Source of the DNA: Neoechinorhynchus agilis
Taxonomy: Eukaryota; Animalia; Acanthocephala
DNA length: 64,000 nucleotides
Direction: 5' to 3'
Assembly (NCBI GenBank): GCA_051530055.1
Contig: CM121341.1
Coordinates: 496,001-560,000 of the forward strand
Part shown: piece by piece, positions 18,470-54,611 of the stretch
Position numbering within the stretch: position 1 is the stretch's first letter
Layout of the letters: the number at the start of each line of letters is the position of its first letter
Notes under the pieces: generated by a model
The model's database searches: none
Seen by the model: the letters and a program-made list of their open reading frames with translations, nothing else
Told to the model about the DNA's origin: nothing
Translations under genes and position numbers: made by a program

Positions 18470-20200
18470 TGCCCTCTGTCAACAATCGACCTAATCAATC
18501 GTGACTGGTTCACATCGATTCTCAACTGAAAATGCGTTCCTCACACTGCCAATCACTTATCCCAACTCAAATTTTCAATTCGCTCCCGGACTTCTCTCTT
18601 TGGGATAATCAGTCCTTTGAGATCGAAAACTCGTATTAATTCCTCACTTAATCCATCACCCGCGACCAGCAATGCAACCTCAATCTCCCTCATTTCCAGC
18701 CCCAATATACCCAAATCAAAAATTACCTTCCCCATCCTACATTAATAATAACACTTTTTATTTGTTGATGCACAAAGAAGAGGACCCATGTACCCTTGGG
18801 TCCCCATAAACACACGAATCTTGGTGGGATAAGAATCTGGCTATTGATTTTGGAGTGGATTACGAGTCCGGGCGGGAGGTAATGTCCGGTCGGGTTGAAA
18901 GGTCCGTTCTGGTGGAGATTGGTGGTTATTGTTTTCAGGAGCACTTGTAAGGTCGGGTCGTTTCTCCGATTCATTTCAAGTTATGATATCCGAGAAGATT
19001 GAGCAGCAAGGAAAAAAGAGTGTAGGTATAGGGAGGTGTGAGGTTGAGGGAGGATGATAAGAATTAGGATTACGAGTGTTATGCTCTTGTCGTTTTGATT
19101 GTTTTATGAAAATAGTGTCAAGGCATTCGGTGAGAGGGGGAAAGTAAGTTGTGCAAATTTTAGATGCTCCTTTATGAAATATTTCAAGGCGACGGATTTG
19201 AGATTTGGATAGGTTGCAAAAGACGGGATAACCGTAGGTGAGGGAGGGTAAAATAAAGCTGAAGTAAAATTTGTAGAGATCGAGTGAAGGGATTCCTAAA
19301 TGTCGGAGGCGTTTGAGGAGATCAATTTTAAAGGTGTTTGGTTTGAGGGAGAGGATGTGCGAGTCCCATTTCAAGTTTGATTGGAATTGGAAACCCAGAA
19401 TTCTGAGGAAGGTTGCTCGTAGAATGTTATTTAGAAGCTCAGGGAGGATTGATGGTATCATTTTCAAGCATTTAGAGAAATTCAGGTGGAGTTTGTGATT
19501 GGTGCAGAAATCTTTTATGCGTGTGATTTCGTTAGAGGTTAAGGAGAGGGAGAAGTGGAGTGGTGTGGGTGATATCGCCTGCGTATAAGTAGAGTTTAGG
19601 GTGAGAGGAGAGAGGTTTGAAGTCATTTGGAAAATATTAAAGAGAAATAGTGACAGCACAGCACCTTGAGGATAGACTGATAGAGGAGGTAGAACGACAG
19701 TGGATGTATTGTTTGCGATTGTGAAGATAAGATTCGAGCCAGCGGATCTGCCATAAGTTGAGATCAAAATCGGAGCAGACCTAGAGAAGGAGTAAATAAT
19801 TCACAGAGTCGAGTGCTTTCGACAAATCCAGTTGAAGGAGACGGATGATTTGGAAGGGATCATGGTCGAGGTTACGAAGGAGCGTGTCATAAGTGCAAAG
19901 TAGGACCTCAATCTTCTCGGATATCATAACTTGTAATGAATCTAAGGAAAGACCAACCTCACAACCTCTCCTGCAAACAATAACCACCAATCCCCACCAG
20001 AACGGACATGCCCAGACCGGATATTCAAACCCGAACGGACTTCCCCCGAACTTACCAAATCCGCATTTCATAGTTTCAATCCAATATGATTTATCGTTCA
20101 AGTAACGATTACCCTATCTTCATCAAAAACAATGTAAAAAGGATGACCTAAAAGTACACGGGTCCATTTCTTGTTAAAATGTCGATATGCGGGGTACCGG
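18470..20200. mobile_element. Rearranged L2/CR1-like LINE copies: plus-strand fragment 18470-18740, minus-strand copy 18750-19900, plus-strand 3' end 19907-20200
   Basis: PQGAVLSLFLF, LRILGFQFQSNLKWDSHI, LQLDLSKALDSV. The segment atcttctcggatatcataacttgtaatgaatc occurs on both strands. 3' stem-loops at 18782-18803 and ~20143-20166. Confidence 0.85.
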
Positions 20201-25410: not shown

Positions 25411-25751
25411 AAAGTTAAACCTCACGATGGATTCTCTCGATATGAGTCTAAAATGCGTTTTATTATGTGGAACGTAGGTAATGCTCCGACGATATCATAA
25501 CGTAAAGCCAATGAATTAATATGTCGACGTAATACGATCGACACTAAAAAAATAAAACCGTACTTCTTCCGTATTTAAAAAGCTTTTTTCTCAACGTCTA
25601 ATTTAGTGCGCGCTTCATTTCACCGTTTTTATAGTACAGCGTCGATGTGTTCTTCTAAGTGACATAAAGTGAGTGCGAGCATTTCTACTTTTTATACTGA
25701 GAATTGATCCAGGTTCAATTAAAAAAGTAATTAATCTTTCAATTTTTTCAC

Positions 25752-26936
25752 CGGCAAGGCAAGGTCTACTAGCGCCCAAATGCCCAATCCCCCAGATGAC
25801 ACAGGCAATGAAGCTTGTTGCCACGCCTCATCTGAGAGCTGGACATTTAAAATACGCTCGAGACAAGCCTTCACCTTGCCGTCGAGCTTAGCCAATCCTT
25901 CCTTATGTTTGAAAAATGTTGCTGTGTGAACCTTGTACAATAATTTGGGGATGAAGAGCGCGTTCTTTATGAGAAACAAGGCTTCATGAGCCGAGAGAGC
26001 GCACACCCTATCGCACAGCAACGAAAGTTTCGGTATGATATGGCCGATCTCATCTTCCACATTGTAATCGAAGACGCAACTGCCCAGGTGGCTGAGTTGC
26101 TCCCGAGTCACGAGTTTCAGACCTGGAGCCACGGCCTCGAACCCAGCCATTAGTTCTTTGACTTTAGCGGCGTCTCCAATATTCAGTACAAGGAGCTCAC
26201 ATTTTCCAGCATTAAGCTCAATGCCCATCTTCGAGGTCTCCCTAATCAGCGTCTCCAGATCGCGCAGTACAACGGAGGGATCATCTCCGAGCGTAGCGTC
26301 ATCCAAGTAACAAGCGTTGAAGCTGGAATGGAGAGAATGCGCTATTGGATTTACTGTTAGGGAGAATGCGATTGGACCGAGGGGATCTCCTTGCTGCACT
26401 CCTCTTTCGGACCAAATGAGGTGGTCTTCGAAAAGCAAAGGAGTCGCCGTCCCTTAGGCATTGAGAAAATACTAGAAAGCTTCTGGGCATGATCTCTAAT
26501 TTCGCAGCACGCACGGCTCTGAGCTTCCCGTAGCAAAGGGACGCCGCGTGTGTGGATACCCTCGCAGCCAGCAACATCCGTTACTCCCTCGAAATCGCCG
26601 GTGGTGCCGCCAGTGCAGCGGAAGGGAGGAAAATACCGAAATATATTCAGTTATCGAGGGCTCACTATTTTGTCCCCTTTGGGGTAGAGACGTATGGAGC
26701 GCTCGGCAGCTCGGCATTCTCTCTGCTCCAGGATATCTCGAAGAAATTGAGAGGCAGCCGGAGACTCAAGAGCAGGTGTATTCCTTCGACAAAATATCTC
26801 GCTAGCAGTACAACGGGGCAATGCTGCCAGCATGATGGCGACGGTAGAGGAAGGACAAAAGCTGGAATTCGGCGGGAGTTGGTGAGTGTGTTAATTGTCG
26901 AGAAATGAAGATTGATTGAATACATTTGTAAACAGT
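25752..26936. mobile_element. CRE-clade retrotransposon fragment with 5' inversion: RT on minus (25752-26537), endonuclease and 3' end on plus (26540-26936)
   Basis: Minus: GVQQGDPLGPIAFSL...YLDDATL, nearly identical to 55980-56680. Plus: DTLAASN...FVPFGVETYG, homologous to 57295-57650. Confidence 0.9.
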
Positions 26937-27439: not shown

Positions 27440-28420
27440 ATTGTTGTGTGGTGGCGACAATTATTTTGTAAATTTATTGAATCGATATTTCGGCTCAATT
27501 CAGTGCCTTTATCAAGATCTGAAAGGTCAGGATAACATTTACACGACTCTCATCTGTAAACCGTGATCCGCTTTGTTGCCTTCCACCGTTTTTAATTTTC
27601 GAATTATTATGGCACTGCGAATCATGATTTTGGTTTTATCAAAATCCATAAGGTGCCCATGATGGGCAAAATGATTGAGCACGGCAGAACTTCTATCAGT
27701 TCCCCTTTGAGTGCGTATTGATGCTCTTTAATTTTTAGGACTATATCGTTCGTCTGCTCAACGTAAGAACAATCACAGCTGATGCACGGAATTTTGTATA
27801 CCACACCTTTGGTCGCATCCTGACATCTCTTGTGTCCGACCCATGATCCTAAGGTGTTCTTCGTGCATATTGTGATGTCCTTGTCCTTTGGCGTTGTCAT
27901 CTTGATGATCCTCTTCAAATCACCGTTTATCGCTTCGTTGACATTGGGGATGCTAATGTGAATTCTAGATTTGTCCGTTATTCTTTTTGTTTTGCTCCTA
28001 GCCCACATGCTATATCTTCTAATCATGTTCGCTGGATATCCCCTGGTTTTAAGGATCATGTTTAGATGATTCAACTCTTTATTTAAACATTCGCTTGTTG
28101 AACAATACATGTAAGCCCTCGAATAAAGTGATCTCATGATGCTTATCTTGTCATTGATTGGTGACATCGTGTTGAAAGGAGCGATATTGGTAATAATCCG
28201 GACTTTCCGATAGACTCTGGTTGCAAAGATATCAGTTCGCTCAATTTCGATATCCAAGAAAGCAAACTTATGATCCTTTTCGGCATCTGCTGTCCGCTGT
28301 ACATTTGTATCCTTTGAATTGAGAATATAGGTAAAAACATCGACATCAACATCTTCATCAATCAAAATAAACGTGTCGTCAACATACCGCTGCCACATTA
28401 ATAATTCATCGATACCTTCT
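27440..28420 (-). mobile_element. 5'-truncated Penelope-like element (RT C-terminus plus GIY-YIG) with degenerate hammerhead at 27481-27518
   Basis: WQRYVDDTF, FAFLDIEI, VYRK, GVVYKIPCISCDCSYVEQT...EHQYA. The 3' motif reads atc TTGATAA A GGC...GCC GAAA TA TC gat. Confidence 0.92.
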
Positions 28421-28429
28421 TTTGTTTTC

Positions 28430-30545
28430 TTAGAATGCTCTGCTTTTCTTGGCATTGGATGTTTCCCAAAACTCTTTAGCCTCCACGATAGCGCCTTTTC
28501 CGTAAAACGTTTTCGTGCCTATAGCAAATTTCGTTTATTCCCGCAAATTGTCCCGGAATGAAATGTTTGCAGGATATGCCGTCGTCGGCATAAGCATGTG
28601 TCCGTACATTGGTTTCGCATTGTATTTCCCATCTTACGTGGCAATTGGCCGTGATTTGTTTAAGGTGATTCTTGCCTTGCCGCCGTAGGACACATTCACT
28701 TTACAGTCGGCCCTCTTTGATTTCTTGAATGAATCAAGCTTCCTTGCTCAACCCTTGCCATCCGTGACATTTCCTATTTTTGCTTATGCAGTATAAGGGC
28801 CATCGCCGCCTGTATTGGTGGGACAGGTAGTGGCTCCATCTAGGCGCGGCAATTGCAGATTCGTTAAGTGCATTTGCACTTTCCTCTACCAGATCACTGA
28901 TTATCTCAGCCCTCTGTCTGGGCGAGAACAACTTAATGCTGTTTGTATTTGACACTCTTCTAATGAGTTCCTGTGACATCCTGTATTTAGCGCAGACCAG
29001 CTCGAGAGTGCGGTCCCTGCTCTTTGCAAAGCCACGCTTGTTGTGGGTCAGCAGGAAGAGTTCTGCCTTCCTTCGATTTTCTTCTACTTGTGCAGGATCT
29101 ATTTCCTTGAAACTGAGGTTTTGGGGCTGACTCATGTCGAGACCAGCCGCTATAAGCTGTTCTCTTATATCGCAGCAGTACTCCTCATCCACCCGATGTC
29201 TCAAAATCCCTACGTAGGCTCGGGCCTTCCTATCCTCTTGAAACAACCTCTGCCAGGCGATCAAACATTTCCCAATATTCGTTCTACAATTTCATCACGT
29301 CTGACTCTCCGTGGGCTGGGACATCCGTCAGCAGCTTTTCTAGTTCTCCTTTCTGCTTGAGCTTGGGTTCTTTGAGCTCAAGCCTACCCTTCAATCTGAG
29401 CCATTCTTTTATCTGGTATGCAGAATCGCACTTCAGTTCTTGAGAGGCTAATTTGTGCGACTAACCCTGAGCATCTTGCAGGCACATGAACCAATTTATT
29501 GTTTCGACCGCTATCATGCGATAGAATTTTGGATCCATACCCTATCTTAGCATATTAACCACTTGGCTTGCCACTGCAGTAATCATGCCTTCTATATTTC
29601 GCACTGACTCTTTGTACCAATTTTCGGAGCAGTAAGTTGCGATGATTGGAGGCAAGGGGCTCCTCGCAATGGGCTCGTCCCTAGCACACATAAGTTGCAA
29701 AACTCATTCCTTCAGCCAACAGCAGTTTCGCTCTTTTGCCTTCATGAACAGATATTTCAACTATATGCTCACGTAGGCCACTGTGGTCACCCAAACTCCA
29801 GTGAACACCACTTCATCGTCACCAGACTTAACCTTGTCACTGAATGGTATTCTTAATCCTGTCACCTCAGCTAAATTGGTTAGAATGTGGTCATATCAGC
29901 GTCGCGTGCATGTAATGAGCCCTGCAAACACTCTCGCTTGCTCCGCAGACGAATCTTCTGAGGAATGTGCGAACCTTCAGCAGTAGCTTTTAGCCAGCTC
30001 CTCCGGTTTGCTCGCCTTAGCCACATAGTGCTGATTGTACGAACTGAAGTTGTATGAAACTGCCCATCCATGGGGCCGCTTCCGATGTTTTCCTGCCCAA
30101 GTCAACACGTCTTCTGGCTGTTGGGAAATTCAAATTCCGTGATCCGGATAAGCCCTCTCCATGTTGCCAGTCGCATGTGCACTGATAAAGGAGTGTATGT
30201 CATTAGATGCGTGTACAGGTTCCTATTCTTATGACCTGGTTCATGCTACGTAAAAGTCCTCACTATAGTATATGCTGACTACCCAAAAACCTCCCAGCAC
30301 ACCTTCAAGCTTTAACATCTCCACTGTCACCTTGCTCATTTCGTTGTCAGTTGTAATCGATTTGGCGCATCTTTTCAGGAACACGCAGGAGAAATCAATA
30401 TTGTGATTGTTCATGAATCTTGTGCACAGTTGCTTAGTCAGATGGTTTCGAGTATAATAATAACACGTTTTCATTACCACACACCCAAACAAGCACGGGA
30501 ACCATGTATCTTTGGAACTAGTCTCCGCATGTGCATGAGCCTTTC
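28430..30545 (-). other. Endogenous viral element: decayed RdRp of a toti-like dsRNA virus (Ghabrivirales-like)
   Basis: Manual translation of 30540-29225 keeps one frame with ~12 stops: HASNDIHSFISAHAT..MERAY..GI.I.QQPEDVLTW, motif A SYNFSSYNQH (30030-30060), RVFAGL, motif C SGDD (29815-29826), LQLM...PLPPIIATYCSENWY (29614-29655). It continues after a frameshift as ORF 28734-29264. Confidence 0.78.
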
Positions 30546-30552
30546 CTCCGAT

Positions 30553-32175
30553 TCAGGCCGTAGACTCATGGGTTGATTGTGCGATGGCAAACAATGATTT
30601 TTTATTTAGTGTGGTGCGAGGGAGAGGCGGCTTGAATCGGTTCGGGCATCGTGTGTTTCGGACGGGTTCCCTTGGCGAGATGAACGGGAGAAATTTAGAT
30701 GGAAGGGAACGCAGGGAGGTAATGTATTTATCGAAGATTTTGGAAAGATGTTCTTCGATTGGTGGGAGGTCCTTGGAGCAAATTTTCCAGGCTCGTTTAT
30801 TTAGAGAGGAGAGCAAGCGCAGTTGATGGATAAATTGCAAAAGGTTGGGTATGCATATGAGATTGCGGGGACCACAACGGACCAATAGAAATGTGCTAGA
30901 TCGCGTGGGCTGACTCCGAGGAAATGCAAGCGCTTGATAAAATACAATTTAGCAGTGGCTTTTGCTACGACGCCATTAATTTGGATGTCCCATTTGAGGT
31001 TGTGTTGGAAGATTAAGCCCAGAATCCGAAGCGATGTGACGCGTTGGATATCGAGAGGGAACGGTGGAATATCAGTCCTAGGTTTTCGAAGCGACGGAAT
31101 AAGTTCATATGATTTGGAGAAATTAATTGAGAGTTGATGGGTGGTGCAAAAATCTTTAAGATTTTCAATCTCTGCGGACGTGAGGCTGAGCGAGAGTGAT
31201 GGAGGAGCATGGGTTATGATGGTTAGGTCGTCCGCATAAAGGAAATATTTAGCGGACGTTGAGAGGGGTGTAAGGTCGTTGAGGAAGATATCGAAAAGTA
31301 AGGGCGATAGTATAGCTCCTTGTGGTACATCCCAATGTATGGGAAGCTTCGTTGAGCAGGTATTTCCCCATTGAAAATATTGCGACCGGTTTGCGAGGAA
31401 AGAAGTGAGCCAGCTTATTTGCCAGGGTAAGAAGCCAAATTTCTCGCAGGCCTTAACGAGAAGATCGTGATCTACAGAGTCAAAGGCCTTGGCAAGATCC
31501 ACCTCGATGATGCGACAAACGAAAGACGGTTCTTGGTCAAGATTGCACAGAATCGAATCGTAAATGCCCAAGAGGGCGTCGGTACATCAGAATCCTGGTC
31601 GGAAGTCGAATTGGTTAGACGAAATGTTTTGTGAAAAGATGGGGAGGATGCGAGTTTTAAAACATTTTTCAAAATTTTTAGGAAACGGCAGGAGTAGAGA
31701 TATAGGGCGAAAGGAAGTCGGCAAAACCAGTCTCCCCGCCTTAGGGATAGGAATGACGAGAGCAGTCCTCAGGCAATCTGGAAAAAAACCCGTTTGAAAG
31801 CTAGAATTGATGATATGAGCTAGAGACTCAAAGATCAAGGAAATGATGAATCGGAGCGTTAGGGGATGATGTACGTGGTAGTTTTTGAGCAGCAGGAAAA
31901 CCGCAAGGATGGAGACGCGTGAATGATGAACGCAGGACCTATGGTTGCGATCGTCGCAGGGGCGTACGACGGTTGTGTCAGTGGAAGATCTGGGAGGGCA
32001 CATGGTAGCGTTCATCGAGTTGAGGGTGTTTCCGAGCTGAAATTTATTCAGGTTGACGAAAGGCTGAGATCTGTGAAGGCCTATGGCATTTTTGATCTCG
32101 CTCCACCAGGAACGATCAGGGATGACGGTAGTTTGGAAAAAGGAAGGTTTTGCGCGCGTGAAGAAGGCGCTCAGT
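30553..32175 (-). mobile_element. L2/CR1-like LINE (RT), 5' side cut by the satellite
   Basis: HIINSSFQTGFFPDCLRTALVIPIPK...FRPISLL, DLAKAFDSVDH, VPQGAILSPLLFDIFLND, YFLYADDLT, LRILGLIFQHNLKW. Confidence 0.92.
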
Positions 32176-32180
32176 GAATA

Positions 32181-35100
32181 TGGAAGAAAGGAAGCTTTTG
32201 CAGGCAACAAGTATTTTGTGAGTTAGTGCATTTTGTAGGTGAGCGATAGGCTGATAGAGAAGGCAGAACGGCAGTGCCGCCTAAACGAATTTTGGAAGAA
32301 AGGAGGCTTTTGCGGGCAACAAGTATTTTGTGAGTTAGTCCATTTTGTAGGTGAGCGATAGGCTGATAGAGAAAGCAGAACGGCAGTGCCATCTAATCGA
32401 ATTTTGGAAGAAAGGAGGCTTTTGCAAGAAACAAGTATTTTGTTAGTTAGGGCATTTTGTAGGTGAGCGAAAGGCTGATGGAGAAAGCAGAACGGCAGTG
32501 CCACCTAAACGGATTTTTGAAGAAAGGAAGCTTTTGCAGGCAACAAGTATTTTGTGAGTTAGTGCATTTTGTAGGTGAGCGAAAGGCTGATAGAGAAAGC
32601 AGAACGGCAGTGCAACCAAAACGAATTTTGGAAGAAAAGAAGCTTTTGAAGGCAACAAGTATTTTGTGAGTTAGTGCATTTTGTAGGTGAGCGATAGGCT
32701 GATAGAGAAGGCAGAACGGCAGTGCCACTCTAAACGACTTTTTGGAAGAAAGGAAGCTTTTGCGGGCAACAAGTATTTTGTGAGTTAGTGCATTTTGTAG
32801 GTGAGCGAAAGGCTGATAGCGGAGGCAGAACGGCAGTGCCACCTAAACGCATTTTGGAAGAAAGGAAGCTTTTGCAGGCAACAAGTATTTTGTGAGTTAG
32901 TGCATTTTGTAGGTGAGCGATAGGCCGATAGAAGAGGCAGAACGACAGTGCCACCTAAACGAATTTATGAAGAAAGGAAGCTTTTGCAGGCAACAAGTAT
33001 TTTGTGAGTTAGTGCATTTTGTAGGTGAGCGACAGGCTGATAGAGGAGGCAGAACGGCAGTGCCACTAAACGGATTTTTGAAGAAAGGAAGCTTTTGCAG
33101 GCAACAAGTATTTTGTGAGTTAGTGCATTTTGTAGGTGAGCGATAGGCTGATAGAGAAGGCAGAACGGCAGTGCCACCTAAACGACTTTTGGAAGAAAGG
33201 AAGCTTTTGCGGGCAACAAGTATTTTGTGAGTTAGTCCATTTTGTAGGTGAGCGATAGGCTGATAGAGAAAGCAGAACGGCAGTGCCATCTAATCGAATT
33301 TTGGAAGAAAGGAGGCTTTTGCAAGAAACAAGTATTTTGTTAGTTAGGGCATTTTGTAGGTGAGCGATAGGCTGATATAGAAAGCAGAACGGCAGTGCCA
33401 CCTAAACGGATTTTTGAAGAAAGGAAGCTTTTGCAGGCAACAAGTATTTTGTGAGTTAGTGCATTTTGGGTGAGCGATAGGCTGATAGAGAAAGCAGAAC
33501 GGCAGTGCCACCTAAACGGATTTTTGAAGAAAGGGAAGCTTTGCAGGCAACAAGTATTTTGTGAGTTAGTGCATTTTGTAGGTGAGCGATAGGCTGATAG
33601 AGAAGGCAGAACGGCAGTGCCACCTAAACGACTTTTGGAAGAAAGGAAGCTTTTGCGGGCAACAAGTATTTTGTGAGTTAGTGCATTTTGTAGGTGAGCG
33701 ATAGGCTGATAGAGAAGGCAGAACGGCAGTGCCACCTAAACGACTTTTGGAAGAAAGGAAGCTTTTGCGGGCAACAAGTATTTTGTGAGTTAGTGCATTT
33801 TGTAGGTGAGCGATAGGCTGATAGAGAAAGCAGAACGGCAGTGCCACCTAAACGAATTTTGGAAGAAAGCAAGCTTTTGCAAGAAACAAGCATCTTGTTA
33901 GTTAGGGCATTTTGTAGGTGAGCGATAGGCTGATATAGAAAGCAGAACGGCAGTGCCACCTAAACGCATTTTTGAAGAAAGGAAGCTTTTGCAGGCAACA
34001 AGTATTTTGTGAGTTAGTGCATTTTGTAGGTGAGCGATAGGCTGATAGAGAAGGCAGAACGGCAGTGCCACCTAAACGACTTTTGGAAGAAAGGAAGCTT
34101 TTGCGGGCAACAAGTATTTTGTGAGTTAGTGCATTTTGTAGGTGAGCGATAGGCTGATAGAGAAAGCAGAACGGCAGTGCCACCTAAACGGATTTTTGAA
34201 GAAAGGAAGCTTTTGCAGGCAACAAGTATTTTGTGAGTTAGTGCATTTTGTAGGTGAGCGATAGGCTGATGGAGAAGGCAGAACGGCAGTGCCACCTAAA
34301 CGACTTTTGGAAGAAAGGAAGCTTTTGCGGGCAACAAGTATTTTGTGAGTTAGTGCATTTTGTAGGTGAGCGATAGGCTGATAGAGAAAGCAGAACGGCA
34401 GTGCCACCTAAACGGATTTTTGAAGAAAGGAAGCTTTTGCAGGCAACAAGTATTTTGTGAGTTAGTGCATTTTGTAGGTGAGCGATAGGCTGATGGAGAA
34501 GGCAGAACGGCAGTGCCACCTAAACGACTTTTGGAAGAAAGGAAGCTTTTGCGGGCAACAAGTATTTTGTGAGTTAGTGCATTTTGTAGGTGAGCGATAG
34601 GCTGATGGAGAAGGCAGAACGGCAGTGCCACCTAAACGGATTTTTGAAGAAAGGAAGTTTTTTGCAGGCAACAAGTATTTTGTGAGTTAGTGCATTTTGT
34701 AGGTGAGCGAAAGGCTGATGGAGAAGGCAGAATCGCAGTGCCACCTAAACGGATTTTGGAAGAAAGGAAGCTTTTGCAGGCAACAAGTATTTTGTGAGTT
34801 AGTGCATTTTGTAGGTGAGCGAAAGGCTGATGGAGAAGGCAGAACGGCAGTGCCACATAAACGAATTTTGGAAGAAAGGAAGCTTTTGCAGGCAACAAGT
34901 ATTTTGTGAGTTAGTGCATTTTGTAAGTGAGCGATAGGCTGTTAGAGAAGGCAGAACGGCAGTGCCACCTAAACGGATTTTGGAAGAAAGGAAGCTTTTG
35001 CAGGCAACAAGTATTTTGTGAGTTAGTGCATTTTGTAGGTGAGCGATAGGCTGTTAGAGAAGGCAGAACGGCAGTGCAACATAAACGAATTTTGGAAGAA

Positions 35101-38100
35101 AGGAAGCTTTTGCAGGCAACAAGCATTTTGTTAGTTAGTGCATTTTGTAAGTGAGCGATAGGCTGATGGAGAAAGCAGAACGGCAGTACCACCTAAACGA
35201 ATTTTGGAAGAAAGGAAGCTTTTGCAGGCAACAAGTATTTTGTGAGTTAGTGCATTTTGTAGGTGAGCGATAGGCTGATAGAGAAAGCAGAACGGCAGTG
35301 CTACCTAAACGGATTTTTGAAGAAAGGAAGCTTTTGCAGGCAACAAGATTTTGTGAGTTAGTGCATTTTGTAGGTGAGCGAAAGGCTGATGGAGAAGGCA
35401 GAACGGCAGTGCCATCTAAACTAATTTTTGAAGAAAGGAAGCTTTTGCAGGCAACAAGTATTTTGTGAGTTAGTTCATTTTGTAGGTGAGCGATAGGCTG
35501 ATGGAGAAAGCAGAACGGCAGTGCAACCAAAACGAATTTTGGAAGAAAGGAGGCTTTTGCAGGCAACAAGTATTTTGTGAGTTAGTGCATTTTGTAGGTG
35601 AGCGATAGGCTGATGGAGAAAGCAGAACGGCAGTGCCATCTAAACGGATTTTGGAAGAAAGGAAGCTTTTGCAGGCAACAAGTATTTTGTGAGTTAGTGC
35701 ATTTTATAGGTGAGCGACAGGCTGATAGAGAAGGCAGAACGGCAGTGCCACATAAACGACTTTTGGAAGAAAGGAAGCTTTTGCGGGCAACAAGTATTTT
35801 GTGAGTTAGTGCATTTTGTAGGTGAGCGACAGGCTGATAGAGAAGGCAGAACGGCAGTGCCGCCTAAACGAATTTTGGAAAAAGGAGGCTTTTGCGGGCA
35901 ACAAGTATTTTACGAGTTAGTGCATTTTGTAGGTGAGCGATAGGCTGATAGAGAAAGCAGAACGGCAGTGCCACATAAACGACTTTTGGAAGAAAGGAAG
36001 CTTTTGCGGGCAACAAGTATTTTGTGAGTTAGTTCATTTTGTAGGTGAGCAAGAGGCTGATGGAGAAGGCAGAACGGCAGTGCCACCTAAACGGATTTTT
36101 GAAGAAAGGAAGCTTTTGCAGGCAACAAGTATTTTGTGAGTTAGTGCATTTTGTAGGTGAGCGATAGGCTGATGGAGAAGGCAGAACGGCAGTGCCACCT
36201 AAACGGATTTTTGAAGAAAGGAAGCTTTTGCAGGCAACAAGTATTTTGTGAGTTAGTGCATTTTGTAGGTGAGCGATAGGCTGATAGAGAAGGCAGAACG
36301 GCAGTGCCACATAAACGAATTTTGGAAGAAAGGAGGCTTTTGCAGGCAACAAGCATTTTGTTAGTTAGTTCATTTTGTAGGTGAGCGATAGGCTGATAGA
36401 GAAGGCAGAACGGCAGTGCCACCTAAACGGATTTTGGAAGAAAGGAAGCTTTTGCAGGCAACAAGTATTTTGTGAGTTAGTGCATTTTGTAGGTGAGCGA
36501 CAGGGCTGATGGAGAAGGCAGAACGGCAGTGCCACCTAAACGGATTTTTGAAGAAAGGAAGCTTTTGCAGGCAACAAGTATTTTGTGAGTTAGTGCATTT
36601 TGTAGGTGAGCGATAGGCTGATGGAGAAGGCAGAACGGCAGTGCCACATAAACGAATTTTTAAAGAAAGGAGGCTTTTGCAGGCAACAAGTATTTTGTGA
36701 GTTAGTGCATTTTGTAGGTGAGCGAAAGGCTGATGGGAGAAGGCGAACGGCAGTGCCACATAAACGAATTTTTGAAGAAAGGAAGCTTTTGCAGGCAACA
36801 AGTATTTTGTTAGTTAGGGCATTTTGTAGGTGAGCGATAGGCTGATAGAGAAAGCAGAACGGCAGTGCCACATAAACGACTTTTGGAAGAAAGGAAGCTT
36901 TTGCAAGAAACAAGCATTTTGTGAGTTAGTGCATTTTATAGGTGAGCGAAAGGCTGATGGAGAAGGCAGAACGGCAGTGCCACATAAACGAATTTTGGAA
37001 GAAAGGAAGCTTTTGCAGGCAACAAGTATTTTGTGAGTTAGTGCATTTTGTAGGTGAGCGATAGGCTGATGGAGAAGGCAGAACGGCAGTGCCACCTAAA
37101 CGGATTTTTGAAGAAAGGAAGCTTTTGCAGGCAAATAAGTATTTTGTGAGTTAGTGCATTTTGTAGGTGAGCAAAAGGCTGATGGAGAAGGCAGAACGGC
37201 AGTGCCACCTAAACGGATTTTTGAAGAAAGGAAGCTTTTGCAGGCAACAAGTATTTTGTGAGTTAGTGCATTTTGTAGGTGAGCGATAGGCTGATGGAGA
37301 AGGCAGAACGGCAGTGCCACATAAACGAATTTTGGAAGAAAGGAAGCTTTTGCAGGCAACAAGTATTTTGTGAGTTAGTGCATTTTGTAGGTTAGCGATA
37401 GGCTGATGGAGAAGGCAGAACGGCAGTGCCACATAAACGAATTTTGGAAGAAAGGAAGCTTTTGCAGGCAACAAGTATTTTGTGAGTTAGTGCATTTTGT
37501 AGGTGAGCGAAAGGCTGATGGAGAAGGCAGAACGGCAGTGCCACCTAAACGGATTTTTGAAGAAAGGAAGCTTTTGCAGGCAACAAGTATTTTGTGAGTT
37601 AGTGCATTTTGTAGGTGAGCGAAAGGCTGATGGAGAAGGCAGAACGGCAGTGCCACATAAACGAATTTTTGAAGAAAGGAAGCTTTTGCAGGCAACAAGT
37701 ATTTTGTGAGTTAGTGCATTTTGTAGGTGAGCGAAAGGCTGATGGAGAAGGCAGAACGGCAGTGCCACATAAACGAATTTTGGAAGAAAGGAAGCTTTTG
37801 CGGGCAACAAGTATTTTGTGAGTTAGTGCATTTTGTAGGTGAGCGAAAGGCTGATGGAGAAGGCAGAACGGCAGTGCCACATAAACGAATTTTTGAAGAA
37901 AGGAAGCTTTTGCAGGCAACAAGTATTTTGTTAGTTAGGGCATTTTGTAGGTGAGCGATAGGCTGATAGAGAAAGCAGAACGGCAGTGCCACATAAACGA
38001 CTTTTGGAAGAAAGGAAGCTTTTGCAGGCAACAAGTATTTTGTGAGTTAGTGCATTTTGTAGGTGAGCGAAAGGCTGATGGAGAAGGCAGAACGGCAGTG

Positions 38101-41100
38101 CCACATAAACGAATTTTGGAAGAAAGGAAGCTTTTGCGGGCAACAAGTATTTTGTGAGTTAGTGCATTTTATAGCTGAGCGATAGGCTGATAGAGAAGGC
38201 AGAACGGCAGTGCCACCTAAACGGATTTTTGAAGAAAGCAAGCTTTTGCAGGCAACAAGTATTTTGTGAGTTAGTGCATTTTGTAGGTGAGCGATAGGCT
38301 GATAGAGACGGCAGAACGGCAGTGCAACCTAAACGAATTTTGGAAGAAAGGAGGCTTTTGCAGGCAACAAGTATTTTGTGAGTTAGTGCATTTTGTAGGT
38401 GAGCGAAATTCTGATAGAGAAAGCAGAACGGCAGTGCCACCTAAACGAATTTTGGAAGAAAGGAAGATTTCGCGGGCAAAAAGTATTTTGTGAGTTAGTG
38501 CATTTTGTAGGTGAGCGATAGGCTGATAGAGAAGGCAGAACGGCAGTGCCACTTAAACGAATTTTGGAAGAAAGGAAGATTTCGCGGGCAACAAGCATTT
38601 TGTGAGTTAGTCCATTTTGTAGGTGAGCGACAGGCTGATAGAGAAAGCAGAACTGCAGTACAACCTAAACGAATTTTGGAAGAAAGGAAGCTTTTGCGGG
38701 CAACAAGTATTTTGTGAGTTAGTGCATTTTGTAGGTGAGCGATAGGCTGATCGAGAAAGCAGAACTGCAGTGCCACCTAAACGAATTTTGGAAGAAGGAA
38801 GCTTTTGCGGGCAACAAGTATTTTGTGAGTTAGCGTGCATTTTGTAGGTGAGCGAAAGGCTGATGGAGAAAGCAGAACGGCAGTACCACCTAAACGAATT
38901 TTGGAAGAAAGGAAGCTTTTGCAGGCAACAAGTATTTTGTGAGTTAGTGCATTTTATAGGTGAGCAAAAGGCTGATGGAGAAGGCAGAACGGCAGTGCCA
39001 TCTTAACTAATTTTGGAAGAAAGGAGGCTTTTGCAGGCAACAAGTATTTTGTGAGTTAGTGCATTTTATAGGTGAGCAAAAGGCTGATGGAGAAGGCAGA
39101 ACGGCAGTGCCATCTAAACTAATTTTGGAAGAAAGGAGCTTTTGCAGGCAACAAGTATTTTGTGAGTTAGTGCATTTTGTAGGTGAGCGATAGGCTGATG
39201 GAGAAAGCAGAACGGCAGTGCCATCTAAACTAATTTTGGAAGAAAGGAGGCTTTTGCAGGCAACAAGTATTTTGTGAGTTAGTGCATTTTGTAGGTGAGC
39301 GATAGGCTGATGGAGAAAGCAGAACGGCAGTGCCATCTAAACGGATTTTGGAAGAAAGGAAGCTTTTTGCAGGCAACAAGCATTTTGTGAGTTAGTGCAT
39401 TTTATAGGTGAGCGAAAGGCTGATAGAGAAGGCAGAACGGCAGTGCCACATAAACGAGCTTTTGGAAGAAAGGAAGCTTTTTGCGGGCAACAAGTATTTT
39501 GTGAGTTAGTGCATTTTGTAGGTGAGCGATAGGCTGATAGAGAAAGCAGAGACGCAACAGTGCCACATAGACGACTTTTGGAAGAAAGGAAGCTTTTGCG
39601 GGCAACAAGTATTTTGTGAGTTAGTGCATTTTGTAGGTGAGCAAAAGGCTGATGGAGAAGGCAGAACGGCAGTGCCACCTAAACGGATTTTTTGAAGAAA
39701 GGAAGCTTTTGCAGGCAACAAGTATTTTGTGAGTTAGTGCATTTTGTAGGTGAGCGATAGGCTGATGGAGAAGGCAGAACGGCAGTGCCACTTCAGGTAA
39801 CAAGAAGTTTTTGGAAGAAAGGGCAGAAGCTAATTTTGCGGGAAACAAGTATTTTGTGAGTTAGTGCATTTTATAGGTGAGCGAAAGGCTGATGCAGAAG
39901 GCAGAACGGCAGTGCCACCTAAACGGATTTTTGAAGAAAGGAAGCTTTTGCAAGAAACAAGCATTTTGTTAGTTGTGAGGGGCACTTTGTAGGTGAGCGA
40001 TAGGCTGATAGAGAAAGCAGAACGGCAGTGCCACCTAAACGAATTTTGGAAGAAAGGAAGCTTTTGCAAGAAACAAGCATTTTGTTAGTTAGGGCATTTT
40101 GTAGGTGAGCGATAGGCTGATAGAGAAAGCAGAACGAAGCGGCAGTGCCACATAAACGACTTTTGGAAGAAAGGAAGCTTTTGCGGGCAACAAGTAGTTT
40201 CATTTTGTAGGTGAGTTAGTGCATTTTATAGGTGAGCGAAAGGCTGATGGAGAAAGCAGAACGGCAGTGCCACCTAAACGAATTTTTGAAGAAAGGAAGC
40301 TTTTTGCGGGCAACAAGTATTTTGTGAGTTAGTGCATTTTGTAGGTGAGCGAAAGGCTGATGGAGAAGGCAGAACGGCAGTGCCACCTAAACGGATTTTG
40401 AAGAAAGGAAGCTTTTGCAAGAAACAAGCATTTTGTTAGTTAGGGCATTTTGTAGGTGAGCGATAGGCTGATAGAGAAGGCAGAACGGCAGTGCCACATA
40501 AACGCAGTGCTTTTGGAAGAAAGGAAGCTTTTGCGGGCAACAAGTATTTTGTGAGTTAGTGCATTTTATAGGTGAGCGTGATAGAGAAAAAAGGCTGATA
40601 GAGAAAGGAAAGGCAGAACGGCAGTGCCACCTAAACGATCAAAACTAATTTTGGAAGAAAGGAAGCTTTTGCGGGCAACAAGTATTTTGTGAGTTAGTGC
40701 ATTTTGTAGGTGAGCGACAGGCTGATAGAGAAGGCAGAACGGCAGTGCCACATAAACGACTTTTGGAAGAAAGGAAGCTTTTGCGGGCAACAAGTATTTT
40801 GTGAGTTAGTGCATTTTGTAGGTGAGCGACAGGCTGATAGAGAAGGCAGAACGGCAGTGCCACATAAACGACTTTTGGAAGAAAGGAAGCTTTTGCGGGC
40901 AACAAGTATTTTGTGAGTTAGTGGATTTTGTAGGTGAGCGAAAGGCTGATAGAGAACGCAGAACGGCAGTGCCATCAAAACGAATTTTGGAAGAAAGGAG
41001 GCATTTGCAGGCAACAAGTATTTTGTGAGTTAGTGCATTTTATAGCTGAGCGATAGGCTGATAGAGAAGGCAGAACGGCAGTGCGACCCTAACGACTTTT

Positions 41101-44100
41101 GGAAGAAAGGAAGCTTTTGCGAGGCAACAAGTATTTTATGAGTTAGTGCATTTTGTAGGTGAGCGATAGGCTGATAGAGAAGGCAGAACGGCAGTGCCAC
41201 CTAAACGAATTTTGGAAGAAAGGAAGCTTTTGCAGGCAACAAGTATTTTGTGAGTTAGTGCATTTTGTAGGTGAGCGAAAGGCTGATAGAGAAAGCAGAA
41301 CGGCAGTGCCACCTAAACGAATTTTGGATGAAAGGAAGACCTAAACGAATTTTGCGGGCAACAAGTATTTTGTGAGTTAGTGCATTTTATAGGTGAGCAA
41401 AAGGCTGATGGAGAAAGCAGAACGGCAGTGCCACCTAAATGAATTTTGGAAAAAGGGAGGCTTTTGCAGGCAACAAGTATTTTGTGAGTTAGTGCATTTT
41501 GTAGGTGAGCGAAAAAGGCTGATAGAGAAAGCAGAACGGGAGTGCCACCTAAACGAATTTTGGAAGAAAGGAAGCTTTTGCGGGCAACAAGTATTTTGTG
41601 AGTTAGTGCATTTTATAGGTGAGCAAAAGGCTGATGGAGAAAGCAGAACGGCAGTGCCACCTAAACGAATTTTGGAAGAAAGGAAGCTTTTGCAGGCAAC
41701 AAGTATTTTGTGAGTTAGTGCATTTTGTAGGTGAGCGATAGGCTGATAGAGAAAGCAGAACGGCAGTGCCACCTAAACGAATTTTGGATGAAAGGAAGAT
41801 TTTGCGGGCAACAAGTATTTTGTTAGTTAGTGCATTTTATAGGTGAGCGAAAGGCTGATGGAGAAAGCAGAACGGCAGTGCCACCTAAACGAATTTTGGA
41901 AAAGTGGAAGCTTTTGCAGGCAACAAGTATTTTGTGAGTTAGTGCATTTTGTAGGTGAGCGAAAGGCTGATAGAGAAAGCAGAACGGCAGTGCCACCTAA
42001 ACGAATTTTGGAAGAAAGGAAGCTTTTGCGGGCAACAAGTATTTTGTGAGTTAGTGCATTTTGTAGGTGAGCGATAGGCTGATAGAGAAGGCAGAACGGC
42101 AGTGCCATCAAAACGAATTTTGGAAGAAAGGAAGCTTTTGCAGGCAACAAGTATTTTGTGAGTTAGTGCATTTTGTAGGTGAGCGATAGGCTGATAGAGA
42201 AGGCAGAACGGCAGTGCCACTTAAACGAATTTTGGAAGAAAGGAAGATTTTGCGGGCAACAAGTATTTTGTGAGTTAGTGCATTTTGTAGGTGAGCGATA
42301 GGCTGATGGAGAAGGCAGAACGGCAGTGCCACCTAAACGAATTTTGGAAGAAAGGAAGCTTTTGGAGGCAACAAGTATTTTGTGAGTTAGTGCATTTTGT
42401 AGGTGAGCGATAGGCTGATGGAGAAGGCAGAACGGCAGTTCCATCTAAACTAATTTTGGAAGAAAGGAAGATTTTGCAAGAAACAAGCATTTTGTTAGTT
42501 AGGGCATTTTGTAGGTGAGCGATAGGCTGATAGAGAAGGCAGAACGGCAGTGCCACCTAAACGAATTTTGGAAGAAAGGAAGCTTTTGCAGGCAACAAGT
42601 ATTTTGTGAGTTAGTGCATTTTGTAGGTGAGCGATAGGCTGATGGAGAAAGCAGAACGGCAGTGCCATCTAAACTAATTTTGGAAGAAAGGAAGATTTTG
42701 CAAGAAACAAGCATTTTGTGAGTTAGTGCATTTTTAGGTGAGCGAAAGGCTGATAGAGAAAGCAGAACGGCAGTGCCACCTAAACGAATTTTGGATGAAA
42801 GGAAGATTTTGCGGGCAACAAGTATTTTGTGAGTTAGTGCATTTTGTAGGTGAGCGAAAGGCTGATGGAGAAAGCAGAACGGCAGTGCCATCTAAACTAA
42901 TTTTGGAAGAAAGGAAGATTTTGCAGGCAACAAGTATTTTGTGAGTTAGTGCATTTTGTAGGTGAGCGAAAGGCTGATAGAAAGCAGAACGGCAGTGCCA
43001 CCTAAACGAATTTTGGATGAAAGGAAGATTTTGCGGGCAACAAGTATTTTGTGAGTTAGTGCATTTTATAGGTGAGCGAAAGGCTGATGGAGAAAGCAGA
43101 ACGGCAGTGCCACCTAAACGAATTTTGGAAGAAAGGAAGCTTTTGCAGGCAACAAGTATTTTGTGAGTTAGTGCATTTTGTAGGTGAGCGATAGGCTGAT
43201 AGAGAAAGCAGAACGGCAGTGCCACCTAAACGGATTTTGGAAGAAAGGAAGCTTTTGCAGGCAACAAGTATTTTGTGAGTTAGTGTATTTTGTAGGTGAG
43301 CGACAGGCTTATAGAGGAGGCAAAACGGCAGTGCCACTAAAACGAATTTTGGAAGAAAGGAAGCTTTTGCAGGCAACAAGTATTTTGTGAGTTAGTGCAT
43401 TTTATTGGTGAGCGAAAGGCTGATGGAGAAAGCAGAACGGCAGTACCACCTAAACGAATTTTGGAAGAAAGGAAGCTTTTGCAGGCAACAAGTATTTTGT
43501 GAGTTAGTGCATTTTGTAGGTGAGCGATAGGCTGATAGAGAAAGCAGAACGGCAGTGCCACCTAAACGAATTTTGGAAGAAAGCAAGCTTTTGCAAGAAA
43601 CAAGCATTTTGTTAGTTAGGGCATTTTGTAGGTGAGCGATAGGCTGATAGAGAAGGCAGAACGGCAGTGCCATCAAAACGAATTTTGGAAGAAAGGAGGC
43701 TTTTGCAGGCAACAAGTATTTTGTGAGTTAGTGCATTTTATAGGTGAGCGATAGGCTGATAGAGAAGGCAGAACGGCACTGCGACCCTAACGACTTTTGG
43801 AAGAAAGGAAACTTTTGCGGGCAACAAGTATTTTATGACTTAGTGCATTTTGTAGGTGAGCGATGGGCTGATAGAGAAGGCAGAACGGCAGTGCCACCTA
43901 AACGAATTTTGGAAGAAAGGAAGCTTTTGGAGGCAACAAGTATTTTGTGAGTTAGTGCATTTTGTAGGTGAGCGATAGGCTGATCGAGAAAGCAGAACTG
44001 CAGTGCCACCTAAACGAATTTTGGAAGAAAGGAAGCTTTTGCGGGCAACAAGTATTTTGTTAGTTAGTCCATTTTGTTGGTGAGTTATAGGCCGATAGAA

Positions 44101-44789
44101 GAGGCAGAACTGCAGTGCCACCTAAACGAATTTTGGAAGAAAGGAAGCTTTTGCGGGCAACAAGTATTTTGTGAGTTAGTGCATTTTGTAGGTGAGCGAT
44201 AGGCTGATAGAGAAGGCAGAACGACAGTGCCACCTAAACGAATTTTGGAAGAAAGGAAGCTTTTCCGGGCAACAAGTATTTTGTGAGTTAGTGCATTTTG
44301 TAGGTGAGCGAAAGGCTGATAGCGGAGGCAGAACGGCAGTGCCACCTAAACGCATTTTGGAAGAAAGGAAGATTTTGCAAGAAACAAGCATTTTGTGAGT
44401 TAGTGCATTTTGTAGGTGAGCGAAAGGCTGATAGAGAAAGCAGAACGGCAGTGCCACCTAAACGAATTTTGGATGAAAAGGAAGCTTTTGCAGGCAACAA
44501 GTATTTTGTGAGTTAGTGCATTTTGTAGGTGAGCGATAGGCTGATAGAGAAGGCAGAACGGCAGTGCCACCTAAACGAATTTTGGAAGAAAGGAAGCTTT
44601 TGCAGGCAACAAGTATTTTGTGAGTTAGTGCATTTTGTAGGTGAGCGATAGGCTGATAGAGAAAGCAGAACGGCAGTGCCACCTAAACGAATTTTGGAAG
44701 AAAGGAAGCTTTTGCAGGCAACAAGTATTTTGTGAGTTAGTGCATTTTGTAGGTGAGCGATAGGCTGATAGAGAAAGCAGAACGGCAGT
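32181..44789 (+). repeat. 112-bp tandem satellite, ~12.6 kb, about 112 units
   Basis: Consensus gtgagttagtgcattttgtaggtgagcgataggctgatagagaaggcagaacggcagtgccacctaaacgaattttggaagaaaggaagcttttgcaggcaacaagtatttt. Track ORFs recur at 112- and 224-nt offsets. Confidence 0.99.
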
Positions 44790-54260: not shown

Positions 54261-54611
54261 AAGTGTGCGATAAAGAGAGATTAGAGGGAAGATTCCGGGA
54301 TTTTTTTACTAAAAAGTGTCCTTTAAAGTCCTCTCGTTCATTATGCAATAAGATTTTTTATATTTGAAAATAGAGTAGGCATTTTGAACTTTTGATTCTC
54401 TTTATTAATACGGCTGCTCAGATTATATCATCACTTTTGTTGGAAGCATTTTTGCTCTTAGCCGGATGAGGTTATTGGAATTGGGAAGATTGCTTCTGAT
54501 ATTCAATGGAGTACATCCGGCATTGCGTGTATCTAAAGGTAATAATTTCAGTTGGTTTTATCTGAACACAATTGATTGCAAGTCATGACGATCACTGGAG
54601 CTTTAGCGTGT

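What the first reader, a model, noticed from the sequence alone, without database searches (positions are those of the whole stretch)
28430..30545. Hidden endogenous dsRNA-virus polymerase (toti-like RdRp) missed by the ORF track
Seen: one minus-strand frame from ~30540 to ~29225 reads as protein through ~12 scattered stops, with ordered motifs ASNDIHSFISAHAT..MERAY, QQPEDVLTW, SYNFSSYNQH, RVFAGL, SGDD and LPPIIATYCSENWY. Knowledge: this order matches motifs A, B and C and the downstream '..AT..SG.WY' block of Ghabrivirales (toti-like, Ustilago maydis virus H1-like) RdRps. Inference: it is a germline-integrated fossil of a probably undescribed dsRNA virus of this animal. The catalytic Asp of motif A reads as Asn and motif B looks damaged, so it is not a functional enzyme.
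Basis: partly seen in the sequence, partly recalled or inferred. Interest (0 to 1): 0.85.

Follow-up and report, generated by a model that had tools for sequence, protein, structure and literature searches.

The report
Fossil toti-like virus polymerase gene
A broken, 5'-truncated copy of the RNA polymerase gene of a toti-like double-stranded RNA virus sits in a chromosome of the thorny-headed worm Neoechinorhynchus agilis. It is a genuine viral fossil of a well-known kind, apparently the first toti-like one noted in this animal phylum.

Summary
The quoted peptides are in the stated minus-strand frame, which has 12 stops in 438 codons against 26 +/- 4.9 in shuffles. Pfam, a word-indexed search and a PDB sequence search on the window's own translation all found nothing. 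An exhaustive HMMER search found 61 relatives, the best at E = 1e-83, and 51 of 52 aligned relatives match Pfam RdRP_4.

Viral homology spans about 28824-30281 (-), with the frame open to 28734. It covers roughly the last 60% of an RdRp. The N-terminal third and the capsid gene are absent from the whole window. The copy has 10 in-frame stops, at least 2 frameshifts and 7 indel blocks. It keeps 27 of 38 invariant columns: motif C 4 of 4, A 2 of 3, B 2 of 6.

The window comes from Neoechinorhynchus agilis (Acanthocephala). Two sister loci in that genome are the fossil's closest relatives, followed by an unnamed 5.5-kb two-ORF virus-like contig. Named relatives are toti-like viruses; no Ustilago maydis virus H1 match appeared.

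Corrections: the bounds are too wide, the motif labels are shifted by one block, and GenBank already carries a 221-aa hypothetical gene on the C-terminal part.

It is a new member of a known kind (toti-like endogenous viral elements).

The parts
28734..30281 (-). Endogenous toti-like viral element: a 5'-truncated, broken copy of a viral RNA-dependent RNA polymerase gene. It covers profile positions 282-781 of 804, roughly residue 316/341 to the C-terminus of relatives. Breaks: 10 in-frame stops, at least 2 frameshifts, 7 indel blocks, net about 50 codons shorter than the nearest paralogue.
   Evidence: phmmer against 1.84 billion proteins, best E 1e-83. tblastn of P0001 and P0003. Profile hits at i-E 5.7e-67, 4e-10 and 6e-5. 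Break and invariant-column counts. Viral homology is demonstrable from 30281 to about 28824; the frame stays open to the stop at 28734.
28734..29415 (-). GenBank gene model ACOME3_000057 (KAL7673775.1, 221 aa, 'hypothetical protein') laid over the C-terminal part of the fossil. It contains the 176-aa ORF 28734-29264, and one short predicted intron bridges a frame change.
   Evidence: P0007 maps at 100% and 86% identity in two pieces. Name and accession. ORF list.
30282..30552 (.). Unassigned spacer between the fossil's 5' end and the end of the neighbouring non-LTR reading frame. It includes most of a 98-codon open stretch (30250-30543) that shows no viral similarity.
   Evidence: No similarity to RdRp N-termini, the capsid-like protein of L004, L002 or L003. 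About 27 open stretches of this length are expected by chance in 64 kb (my arithmetic).
30553..32210 (-). Upstream neighbour: fragment of a non-LTR retrotransposon (reverse transcriptase ORFs 31587-32210, 30801-31571 and 30553-885), in the same orientation as the fossil.
   Evidence: Pfam RVT_1 at 2.3e-20 and 1.6e-3. Protein similarity to other RT copies at 4989-5222 and 19102-19335. Frames read.
28456..28733 (.). Unassigned spacer between the fossil's terminal stop and the Penelope-like ORF. The viral/retroelement junction lies somewhere here or just upstream. No poly(A) run is visible.
   Evidence: Sequence read. No Pfam hit. No similarity to the other Penelope-like copy.
27622..28455 (-). 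Downstream neighbour: ORF with a reverse-transcriptase YVDD motif and a C-terminal GIY-YIG-like region. I read it as a 5'-truncated Penelope-like retroelement, in the same orientation as the fossil.
   Evidence: BLASTP E 9e-10 to ORF 7099-8262, which has a weak Pfam GIY-YIG hit. There is no direct Pfam hit, so the family assignment is an inference from motifs and architecture.

Best explanation
The region is a non-retroviral endogenous viral element. It is a DNA copy of the 3' part of the plus-strand RNA of a toti-like (order Ghabrivirales-type) dsRNA virus, covering about the last 60% of its RdRp gene.

Shown: it is fixed in a chromosome-scale scaffold of the acanthocephalan Neoechinorhynchus agilis. 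It is now a pseudogene, with 10 in-frame stops, at least 2 frameshifts, several indels, no N-terminal third, no capsid gene, and motifs A and B no longer intact. It therefore cannot act as a polymerase and cannot give rise to a virus.

Inferred: like other such elements, it arose when a host retroelement's reverse transcriptase copied viral RNA in the germ line. A truncated Penelope-like element lies directly downstream and a non-LTR element directly upstream, both in the same orientation as the fossil. That layout fits template switching during retroelement reverse transcription but does not prove it.

Any present role would be indirect, as a transcript or small-RNA source. Nothing here shows such a role.
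For: - P0001 scores 1e-83 and P0003 8e-40.
- 9 of the 10 best hits tested, and 51 of 52 aligned relatives, match Pfam RdRP_4 above the curated cut-off.
- A profile of 10 relatives hits three collinear pieces of the window's minus strand (i-E 5.7e-67, 4e-10, 6e-5), covering profile positions 282-781 of 804.
- 27 of 38 family-invariant columns are kept, including all 4 of motif C.
- Neighbour-joining tree on 300 columns: the window groups with the two N. agilis paralogues in 100 of 100 bootstraps, and with P0003 in 99 of 100.
- P0003 lies on a 5551-nt contig with two ORFs of 947 and 888 aa and an overlapping stop/start, which is a toti-like genome layout. Other relatives lie on 5.2-6.5 kb contigs.
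- Named relatives by sequence: Phytophthora palustris toti-like virus 4 and 7, Beihai barnacle virus 15, and a MAG labelled Totiviridae sp..
- Named relatives by fold, using the model of P0001 (pLDDT 82.7): Erysiphales associated totivirus 24, Ahus virus, Hubei toti-like virus 6 and Tinsley toti-like virus. All top PDB matches are viral RdRps.
- Host context: the window's RPB5 gene is found on CM121341.1 of GCA_051530055.1, and the window also holds a dynein heavy chain, a DEAD-box helicase and retrotransposons.
Against: - The window's own translation gives no direct Pfam hit, no hit in the word-indexed search of 5.8 billion proteins, and no PDB sequence hit.
- Integration rests on the published hybrid assembly. 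No reads were inspected.
- No poly(A) tail was visible at the two junctions read. Target-site duplications were not searched for, and both junctions fall in about 270-nt stretches that I could not assign.
- The last 168 codons are free of stops (P = 0.018, post hoc). That is slightly odd for uniform neutral decay.
Confidence: 0.93

Rival explanations
1. The C-terminal part (28734-29415, gene model ACOME3_000057) has been co-opted by the host as a small protein-coding gene, while the rest of the fossil decays.
For: All 10 in-frame stops fall in the first 344 aligned codons and none in the last 168 (hypergeometric P = 0.018). The corresponding parts of the L002 homologue are equally prone to stop mutations. 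A gene model exists in GenBank. In planthoppers a toti-like element with a recombinant N-terminus is translated (PMC10636211).
Against: The P value is post hoc and marginal. The gene model bridges a frame change with a short predicted intron, as an automatic predictor would do. This part is no better conserved than the rest: 45% against 55% amino-acid identity to L002. The ORF has no Pfam domain, and no expression data were available.
Confidence: 0.06
2. The locus works as a source of antiviral or regulatory small RNAs. It would be a viral fragment embedded among same-orientation transposon fragments, like piRNA-cluster EVEs of arthropods. This is compatible with the fossil reading rather than exclusive of it.
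For: Four successive pieces lie on the minus strand between 25.7 and 32.2 kb: an RT fragment at 25731-26438, the Penelope-like ORF, the fossil and the non-LTR fragment. Most disrupted toti-like elements of planthoppers yield 24-29 nt small RNAs (PMC10636211).
Against: Four elements in one orientation is a 1-in-8 event by chance. No small-RNA data were available. At 31-39% protein identity to the nearest virus-like contig, there would be little nucleotide complementarity to any known relative.
Confidence: 0.12
3. Assembly artefact or contaminant: the RdRp-like stretch is not part of the worm's chromosome.
For: The assembly is a hybrid of short and long reads from pooled worms taken from fish gut, scaffolded with Hi-C (PMC12690905). 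One sister locus is on an unplaced 61-kb contig.
Against: A dsRNA virus is not sampled by DNA libraries. The copy is truncated and full of stops and frameshifts. It is continuous with worm retroelements and lies 7.5 kb from a host RPB5 gene on a 19.4-Mb scaffold. A second locus lies on a 7.8-Mb chromosome scaffold.
Confidence: 0.02
4. It derives from a cellular or transposon polymerase rather than from an RNA virus.
For: It is flanked by two reverse-transcriptase elements. The window's translation has no direct Pfam hit.
Against: Every significant relative tested is an RdRP_4 protein. There is no similarity to any RT in the window. Fold matches are viral RdRps only.
Confidence: 0.005

Closest known systems
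[quoted passage not shown]
   Same: RdRp-derived or capsid-derived DNA copies of toti-like dsRNA viruses in animal chromosomes. Most have disrupted frames. Several loci occur per genome, and some are fused to unrelated N-terminal sequence.
   Different: The host is an acanthocephalan, not an arthropod. No expression or small-RNA data exist here. The window copy is an RdRp fragment only.
Totivirus-like genes in fungal genomes (Taylor and Bruenn 2009, PMC2805616)
   Same: Non-retroviral integration of totivirus RdRp and capsid genes. The same question arises of purifying selection against decay.
   Different: The fungal copies are often intact and expressed. The window copy is clearly broken.
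Mononegavirales-like RdRp elements in the acanthocephalan Pomphorhynchus laevis (PMC12548735)
   Same: Same host phylum. These are RNA-virus polymerase fragments hidden among 'hypothetical proteins' of a genome annotation.
   Different: They come from a different virus realm branch (negative-strand, rhabdo-like). They lie on unplaced contigs whose host origin was uncertain, whereas this one lies in a chromosome-scale scaffold. That paper reports no toti-like element for the phylum.
Sister loci in the same genome: L002 (KAL7667764.1, 866 aa model) and L003 (KAL7669277.1, 777 aa model)
   Same: They form one clade with the window copy (100 of 100 bootstraps), at 46-57% amino-acid identity.
   Different: They are far better preserved. 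L002 reads through almost the whole RdRp length as two ORFs in one frame. L003 is one intact 786-codon ORF. The two differ mostly at third codon positions (dN/dS 0.017).
Nearest virus-like sequences: unnamed 5551-nt two-ORF contig from run SRR6291360 (P0003). Nearest named: Erysiphales associated totivirus 24, Hubei toti-like virus 6, Tinsley toti-like virus, Phytophthora palustris toti-like viruses 4 and 7
   Same: RdRP_4 polymerase with the same order of conserved blocks. The genome layout is a capsid ORF followed by an RdRp ORF.
   Different: Identity is low: 31-39% to P0003 and 20-32% to named viruses. No described virus is close.

Membership tests
Toti-like viral RdRp (Pfam RdRP_4, PF02123; Ghabrivirales-type) | Significant sequence similarity to proteins that carry the RdRP_4 domain | tested here: met
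   61 hits, the best at 1e-83. 51 of 52 aligned relatives match RdRP_4. Profile against the window: i-E 5.7e-67.
Toti-like viral RdRp (Pfam RdRP_4, PF02123; Ghabrivirales-type) | Direct match of the window's own translation to the Pfam RdRP_4 model | tested here: not met
   No Pfam family at E <= 10 for the X-marked frame. The copy is too decayed and divergent; even the intact paralogue P0001 scores only 34.9 bits.
Toti-like viral RdRp (Pfam RdRP_4, PF02123; Ghabrivirales-type) | Palm motifs A, B and C in canonical order, with GDD in motif C | tested here: met
   The order is kept. Invariant columns kept: motif C 4 of 4, A 2 of 3, B 2 of 6, pre-A block 11 of 13, post-C block 7 of 10. The motifs are recognisable but not all intact.
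Toti-like viral RdRp (Pfam RdRP_4, PF02123; Ghabrivirales-type) | Relatives are small dsRNA-virus-type genomes of about 5-7 kb, with a capsid ORF followed by an RdRp ORF | tested here: met
   L004 is 5551 nt with ORFs of 947 and 888 aa and an overlapping stop/start. Other relatives lie on 5.2-6.5 kb contigs.
Toti-like viral RdRp (Pfam RdRP_4, PF02123; Ghabrivirales-type) | Named members of the group come back as relatives | tested here: met
   By sequence: Phytophthora palustris toti-like virus 4 and 7, Beihai barnacle virus 15, MAG Totiviridae sp.. By fold, for the paralogue: Erysiphales associated totivirus 24, Hubei toti-like virus 6, Aedes aegypti toti-like virus and others.
   It is not among the 30 hits whose names were looked up, nor in the top 50 fold matches.
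Non-retroviral endogenous viral element (nrEVE) | RNA-virus-derived sequence contiguous with host chromosomal DNA | tested here: met
   It lies within a 19.4-Mb scaffold of N. agilis, between host genes and retroelements. This holds at assembly level only.
Non-retroviral endogenous viral element (nrEVE) | Raw DNA reads or PCR products span both junctions | not testable with these tools
Non-retroviral endogenous viral element (nrEVE) | Incomplete and/or disrupted viral coding capacity | tested here: met
   10 in-frame stops, at least 2 frameshifts and 7 indel blocks. The N-terminal third of the RdRp and the capsid gene are absent from the whole 64 kb.
Non-retroviral endogenous viral element (nrEVE) | Vertical inheritance: the same locus in other individuals or related species | not testable with these tools
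   No other acanthocephalan genome could be searched at DNA level.
Co-opted (domesticated) EVE gene | Intact reading frame kept by purifying selection, with expression | tested here: not met
   The window copy is broken. The result is inconclusive only for its last 168 codons. Expression was not testable.

The most novel reading that the evidence does not exclude
The window fossil may be the oldest trace of a toti-like virus lineage specific to acanthocephalans, one that has entered the N. agilis germ line repeatedly and is still biologically active in some form. Two sister loci differ by 12.5% of nucleotides but only 3% of amino acids (dN/dS 0.017), and one of them is an intact 786-codon fusion ORF. 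Either the host keeps RdRp-derived genes under selection, as planthoppers do with NlToEVE14, or two strains of an exogenous virus of this worm integrated recently. The second case would point to the first virus known for the phylum. The stop-free, annotated C-terminal 168 codons of the window copy could then be a third, partly co-opted piece.
Probability: 0.3. Interest if true: 0.6.

Novelty: new member of a known kind. Interest (0 to 1): 0.4.

Why it matters
Toti-like endogenous elements are well documented in fungi, arthropods, nematodes and plants, so the kind is not new.

This case adds a host phylum. Acanthocephala have no described exogenous virus, and the only earlier EVE report for the phylum is of rhabdo-like fragments on unplaced contigs of uncertain host origin. 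This copy sits in a chromosome-scale scaffold.

With its two better-preserved sister loci, it shows that a distinct toti-like lineage has been associated with these fish parasites. It also gives a probe for finding the living virus in the 74 published RNA-seq libraries.

For annotation, it shows that at least three 'hypothetical proteins' of the N. agilis gene set are viral polymerase relics.

Tried and rejected
- Pfam scan of the window's X-marked frame and of the 176-aa ORF: no family.
- Word-indexed homology searches: none for the frame, none for the Penelope-like ORF, and only 4 hits for the profile. The word index misses this family.
- PDB sequence searches: none for the frame. Profile A1 gave only chance hits. 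Profile A3 gave marginal hits to norovirus and picobirnavirus RdRps at E 0.02.
- First structure model from a 4-sequence alignment had pLDDT 38 and was discarded. The second, from 52 sequences, was used.
- Search for the missing RdRp N-terminus and for capsid-like sequence anywhere in the window: noise only.
- Idea that the 98-codon open stretch at 30250-30543 is capsid-derived: rejected. The tblastx hint was a sum-statistics artefact in another frame.
- My by-eye reading of Penelope-like RT motifs in 28456-28733: not supported by Pfam or by comparison with the other Penelope-like copy, so dropped.
- DNA or protein repeats of the fossil within the window: none.
- Origin of the N-terminal about 410 aa of the L003 fusion ORF: no Pfam hit, no IMG/VR relative, no similarity to the L004 genes.
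- Rfam and tRNA scans of the window: nothing.
- Paper search for run SRR6291360: nothing.
- Same-orientation RT elements downstream of all three loci: too weak to count as evidence for a mechanism in this transposon-dense genome.

Full report
**The observation**

Between 29225 and 30540 this frame has 12 stops in 438 codons. Shuffles of the same bases give 26.0 +/- 4.9, and the lowest of 300 shuffles had 14.

The region is single-copy in the window at both DNA and protein level.

**Identification**

Direct tests on the window's own translation (stops marked X, frames never joined) all failed:
- no Pfam family at E <= 10;
- no hit in the word-indexed search of 5.8 billion proteins;
- no PDB sequence hit.

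The exhaustive HMMER search of 1.84 billion representatives settled the matter. It returned 61 proteins at E <= 1e-3, led by P0001 (1e-83), P0002 (2e-47), P0003 (8e-40), P0004 and P0005 (1e-23).
- Nine of the ten best hits tested, and 51 of 52 aligned relatives, match Pfam RdRP_4 above its curated cut-off.
- A profile built from ten relatives hits three collinear pieces of the window's minus strand, in two reading frames. The i-E values are 5.7e-67, 4e-10 and 6e-5, covering profile positions 282-781 of 804.
- A model of the nearest paralogue P0001 built from 52 sequences is confident (pLDDT 82.7, pTM 0.84). Its best named matches in BFVD are RdRps of Erysiphales associated totivirus 24, Ahus virus, Hubei toti-like virus 6, Aedes aegypti toti-like virus and Tinsley toti-like virus, followed by chryso-, megabirna- and fusagra-like viruses.
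- In the PDB, all top matches are viral RdRps, led by rotavirus VP1.
- Names found by sequence among the more distant hits are Phytophthora palustris toti-like virus 4 and 7, Beihai barnacle virus 15 and a MAG labelled Totiviridae sp..

**Host and integration**

The window's RPB5 gene is found exactly on CM121341.1, a 19.4-Mb scaffold of assembly GCA_051530055.1. Cluster look-ups name the organism as Neoechinorhynchus agilis, an acanthocephalan parasite of mullets. The genome paper describes a hybrid Illumina, Nanopore and HiFi assembly with Hi-C scaffolding and BRAKER annotation, and says nothing about viruses (PMC12690905).

The window also carries a DEAD-box helicase, a ribosomal protein, a nucleotidyltransferase, a 1996-codon dynein heavy chain ORF and many retroelement fragments. 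A dsRNA virus cannot enter a DNA library as such, and this copy is truncated and broken. It is therefore integrated DNA, although I could not inspect reads.

**Anatomy**

- Extent. Viral homology runs from 30281 to about 28824, and the frame stays open to the stop at 28734. This corresponds to residues 341-852 of P0001 (866 aa) and 316-875 of P0003 (888 aa).
- What is missing. The N-terminal third of the RdRp and any capsid-like sequence are absent from the whole 64 kb.
- Breaks. I count 10 in-frame stops, at least 2 frameshifts and 7 indel blocks relative to the L002 copy. The net loss is about 50 codons.
- Conserved columns. 27 of the 38 family-invariant columns inside the span are kept: pre-A block 11 of 13, motif A 2 of 3, motif B 2 of 6, motif C 4 of 4, post-C block 7 of 10. 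The gene cannot encode an active polymerase.
- Motif labels. The string called motif A belongs to a conserved block upstream of A. The string called B is the family's motif A. True motif B lies between RVFAGL and SGDD.
- Existing annotation. GenBank carries a 221-aa 'hypothetical protein' (ACOME3_000057) on 29415-28737, which bridges a frame change with a short predicted intron.

**Neighbours**

- Upstream, on the same strand, is a non-LTR reverse-transcriptase fragment at 32210-30553 (Pfam RVT_1). It abuts a 12.6-kb satellite.
- Downstream, on the same strand, is ORF 28455-27622. It has a YVDD motif and is homologous (E 9e-10) to ORF 7099-8262, which has a weak GIY-YIG hit. I read both as Penelope-like elements; this is an inference from architecture.
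- About 270 nt on each side of the fossil could not be assigned, and no poly(A) run is visible at either junction.
- The same-orientation sandwich fits the established view that RNA-virus sequences enter genomes through retroelement reverse transcription with template switching. The step is inferred, not shown.

**Relatives and history**

On 300 columns of the single-frame main piece, the window groups with the two N. agilis paralogues in 100 of 100 bootstraps. That group joins the unnamed contig of P0003 in 99 of 100. P0003 lies on a 5551-nt contig with a 947-aa ORF and an 888-aa RdRp ORF whose stop and start overlap. I used that contig only as two separate gene products plus a 21-base junction read.

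Against L002, the window copy differs at 37%, 28% and 54% of first, second and third codon positions. Much of the divergence therefore arose under selection, presumably in the virus, before or between integrations.

From 10 stops in 344 codons, a rough neutral estimate is about 0.2 substitutions per site since inactivation. This is my own arithmetic and is only indicative.

**One oddity**

All stops lie in the first 344 aligned codons and none in the last 168 (P = 0.018, post hoc). I treat co-option of that part as a low-probability rival.

**Comparison with what is known**

- Toti-like endogenous elements are established in fungi (PMC2805616).
- They are also established in plants (PMC3136472) and crustaceans (PMC4231630).
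- In planthoppers most are disrupted small-RNA sources, and one is translated with a recombinant N-terminus (PMC10636211).
- For Acanthocephala, the searchable literature holds only rhabdo-like RdRp fragments in Pomphorhynchus laevis, with the remark that no virus of that host is known (PMC12548735).
- No paper combined acanthocephalans with toti-like viruses.

**Verdict**

It is a new member of a known kind, of moderate interest. Most of that interest comes from the host phylum and from the better-preserved sister loci.

Noticed in passing
L002 9686-10693 and L003 9258-10265 (same genome, other scaffolds): Two sister RdRp-derived loci are 87.5% identical in DNA but 97% identical in protein. 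104 of 126 differences are at third codon positions, with dN 0.015, dS 0.88 and ratio 0.017, and neither has a stop over 336 codons. Either two related virus strains integrated recently, or the host keeps these genes under purifying selection.
   Followed up: partly
L003 8001-10361 (chromosome CM121343.1): An intact 786-codon ORF fuses about 410 residues of unknown origin in frame to the C-terminal about 370 residues of the toti-like RdRp. The unknown part has no Pfam hit, no IMG/VR relative and no similarity to the virus-like contig's genes. A further RdRp N-terminal piece lies 1.6 kb upstream, at 6160-6356. It recalls the recombinant planthopper NlToEVE14.
   Followed up: partly
L002 3492-4271 and 8081-10744 (unplaced contig JBMGUZ010000010.1): A nearly full-length RdRp frame is split into two ORFs in the same frame. 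It matches residues 6-848 of the virus-like RdRp in one alignment. Two capsid-like fragments lie upstream in swapped order. This is a much younger or better-kept integration than the window's.
   Followed up: partly
window 32181-44789: A 12.6-kb satellite of about 112 copies of a 112-bp unit (91% matches) has a strong, constant GC skew of about +0.4. It abuts the 5' end of the non-LTR fragment.
   Followed up: no
window 7099-8262 (+) and 27622-28455 (-): Two divergent ORFs have a reverse-transcriptase YVDD motif followed by a GIY-YIG-like end. This architecture is typical of Penelope-like retroelements. Only one has a (weak) Pfam GIY-YIG hit, and neither has relatives in the word-indexed protein search.
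   Followed up: partly
window 57988-63978 (-): An uninterrupted 1996-codon ORF encodes the C-terminal part of a dynein heavy chain and runs off the window end. That is unusually long for an intron-free stretch in an animal gene.
   Followed up: no
window 26538-26890, 49445-49800, 57293-57648; ORFs 49418-50581 (-), 54576-56729 (+), 57178-57675 (+): Several about 95% identical copies of another retroelement family point to recent transposition in this region. Its RT-bearing ORFs have a cysteine-rich N-terminal part.
   Followed up: no
It has no detectable similarity to viral or retroelement proteins. It is probably chance, since about 27 such stretches are expected in 64 kb.
   Followed up: yes
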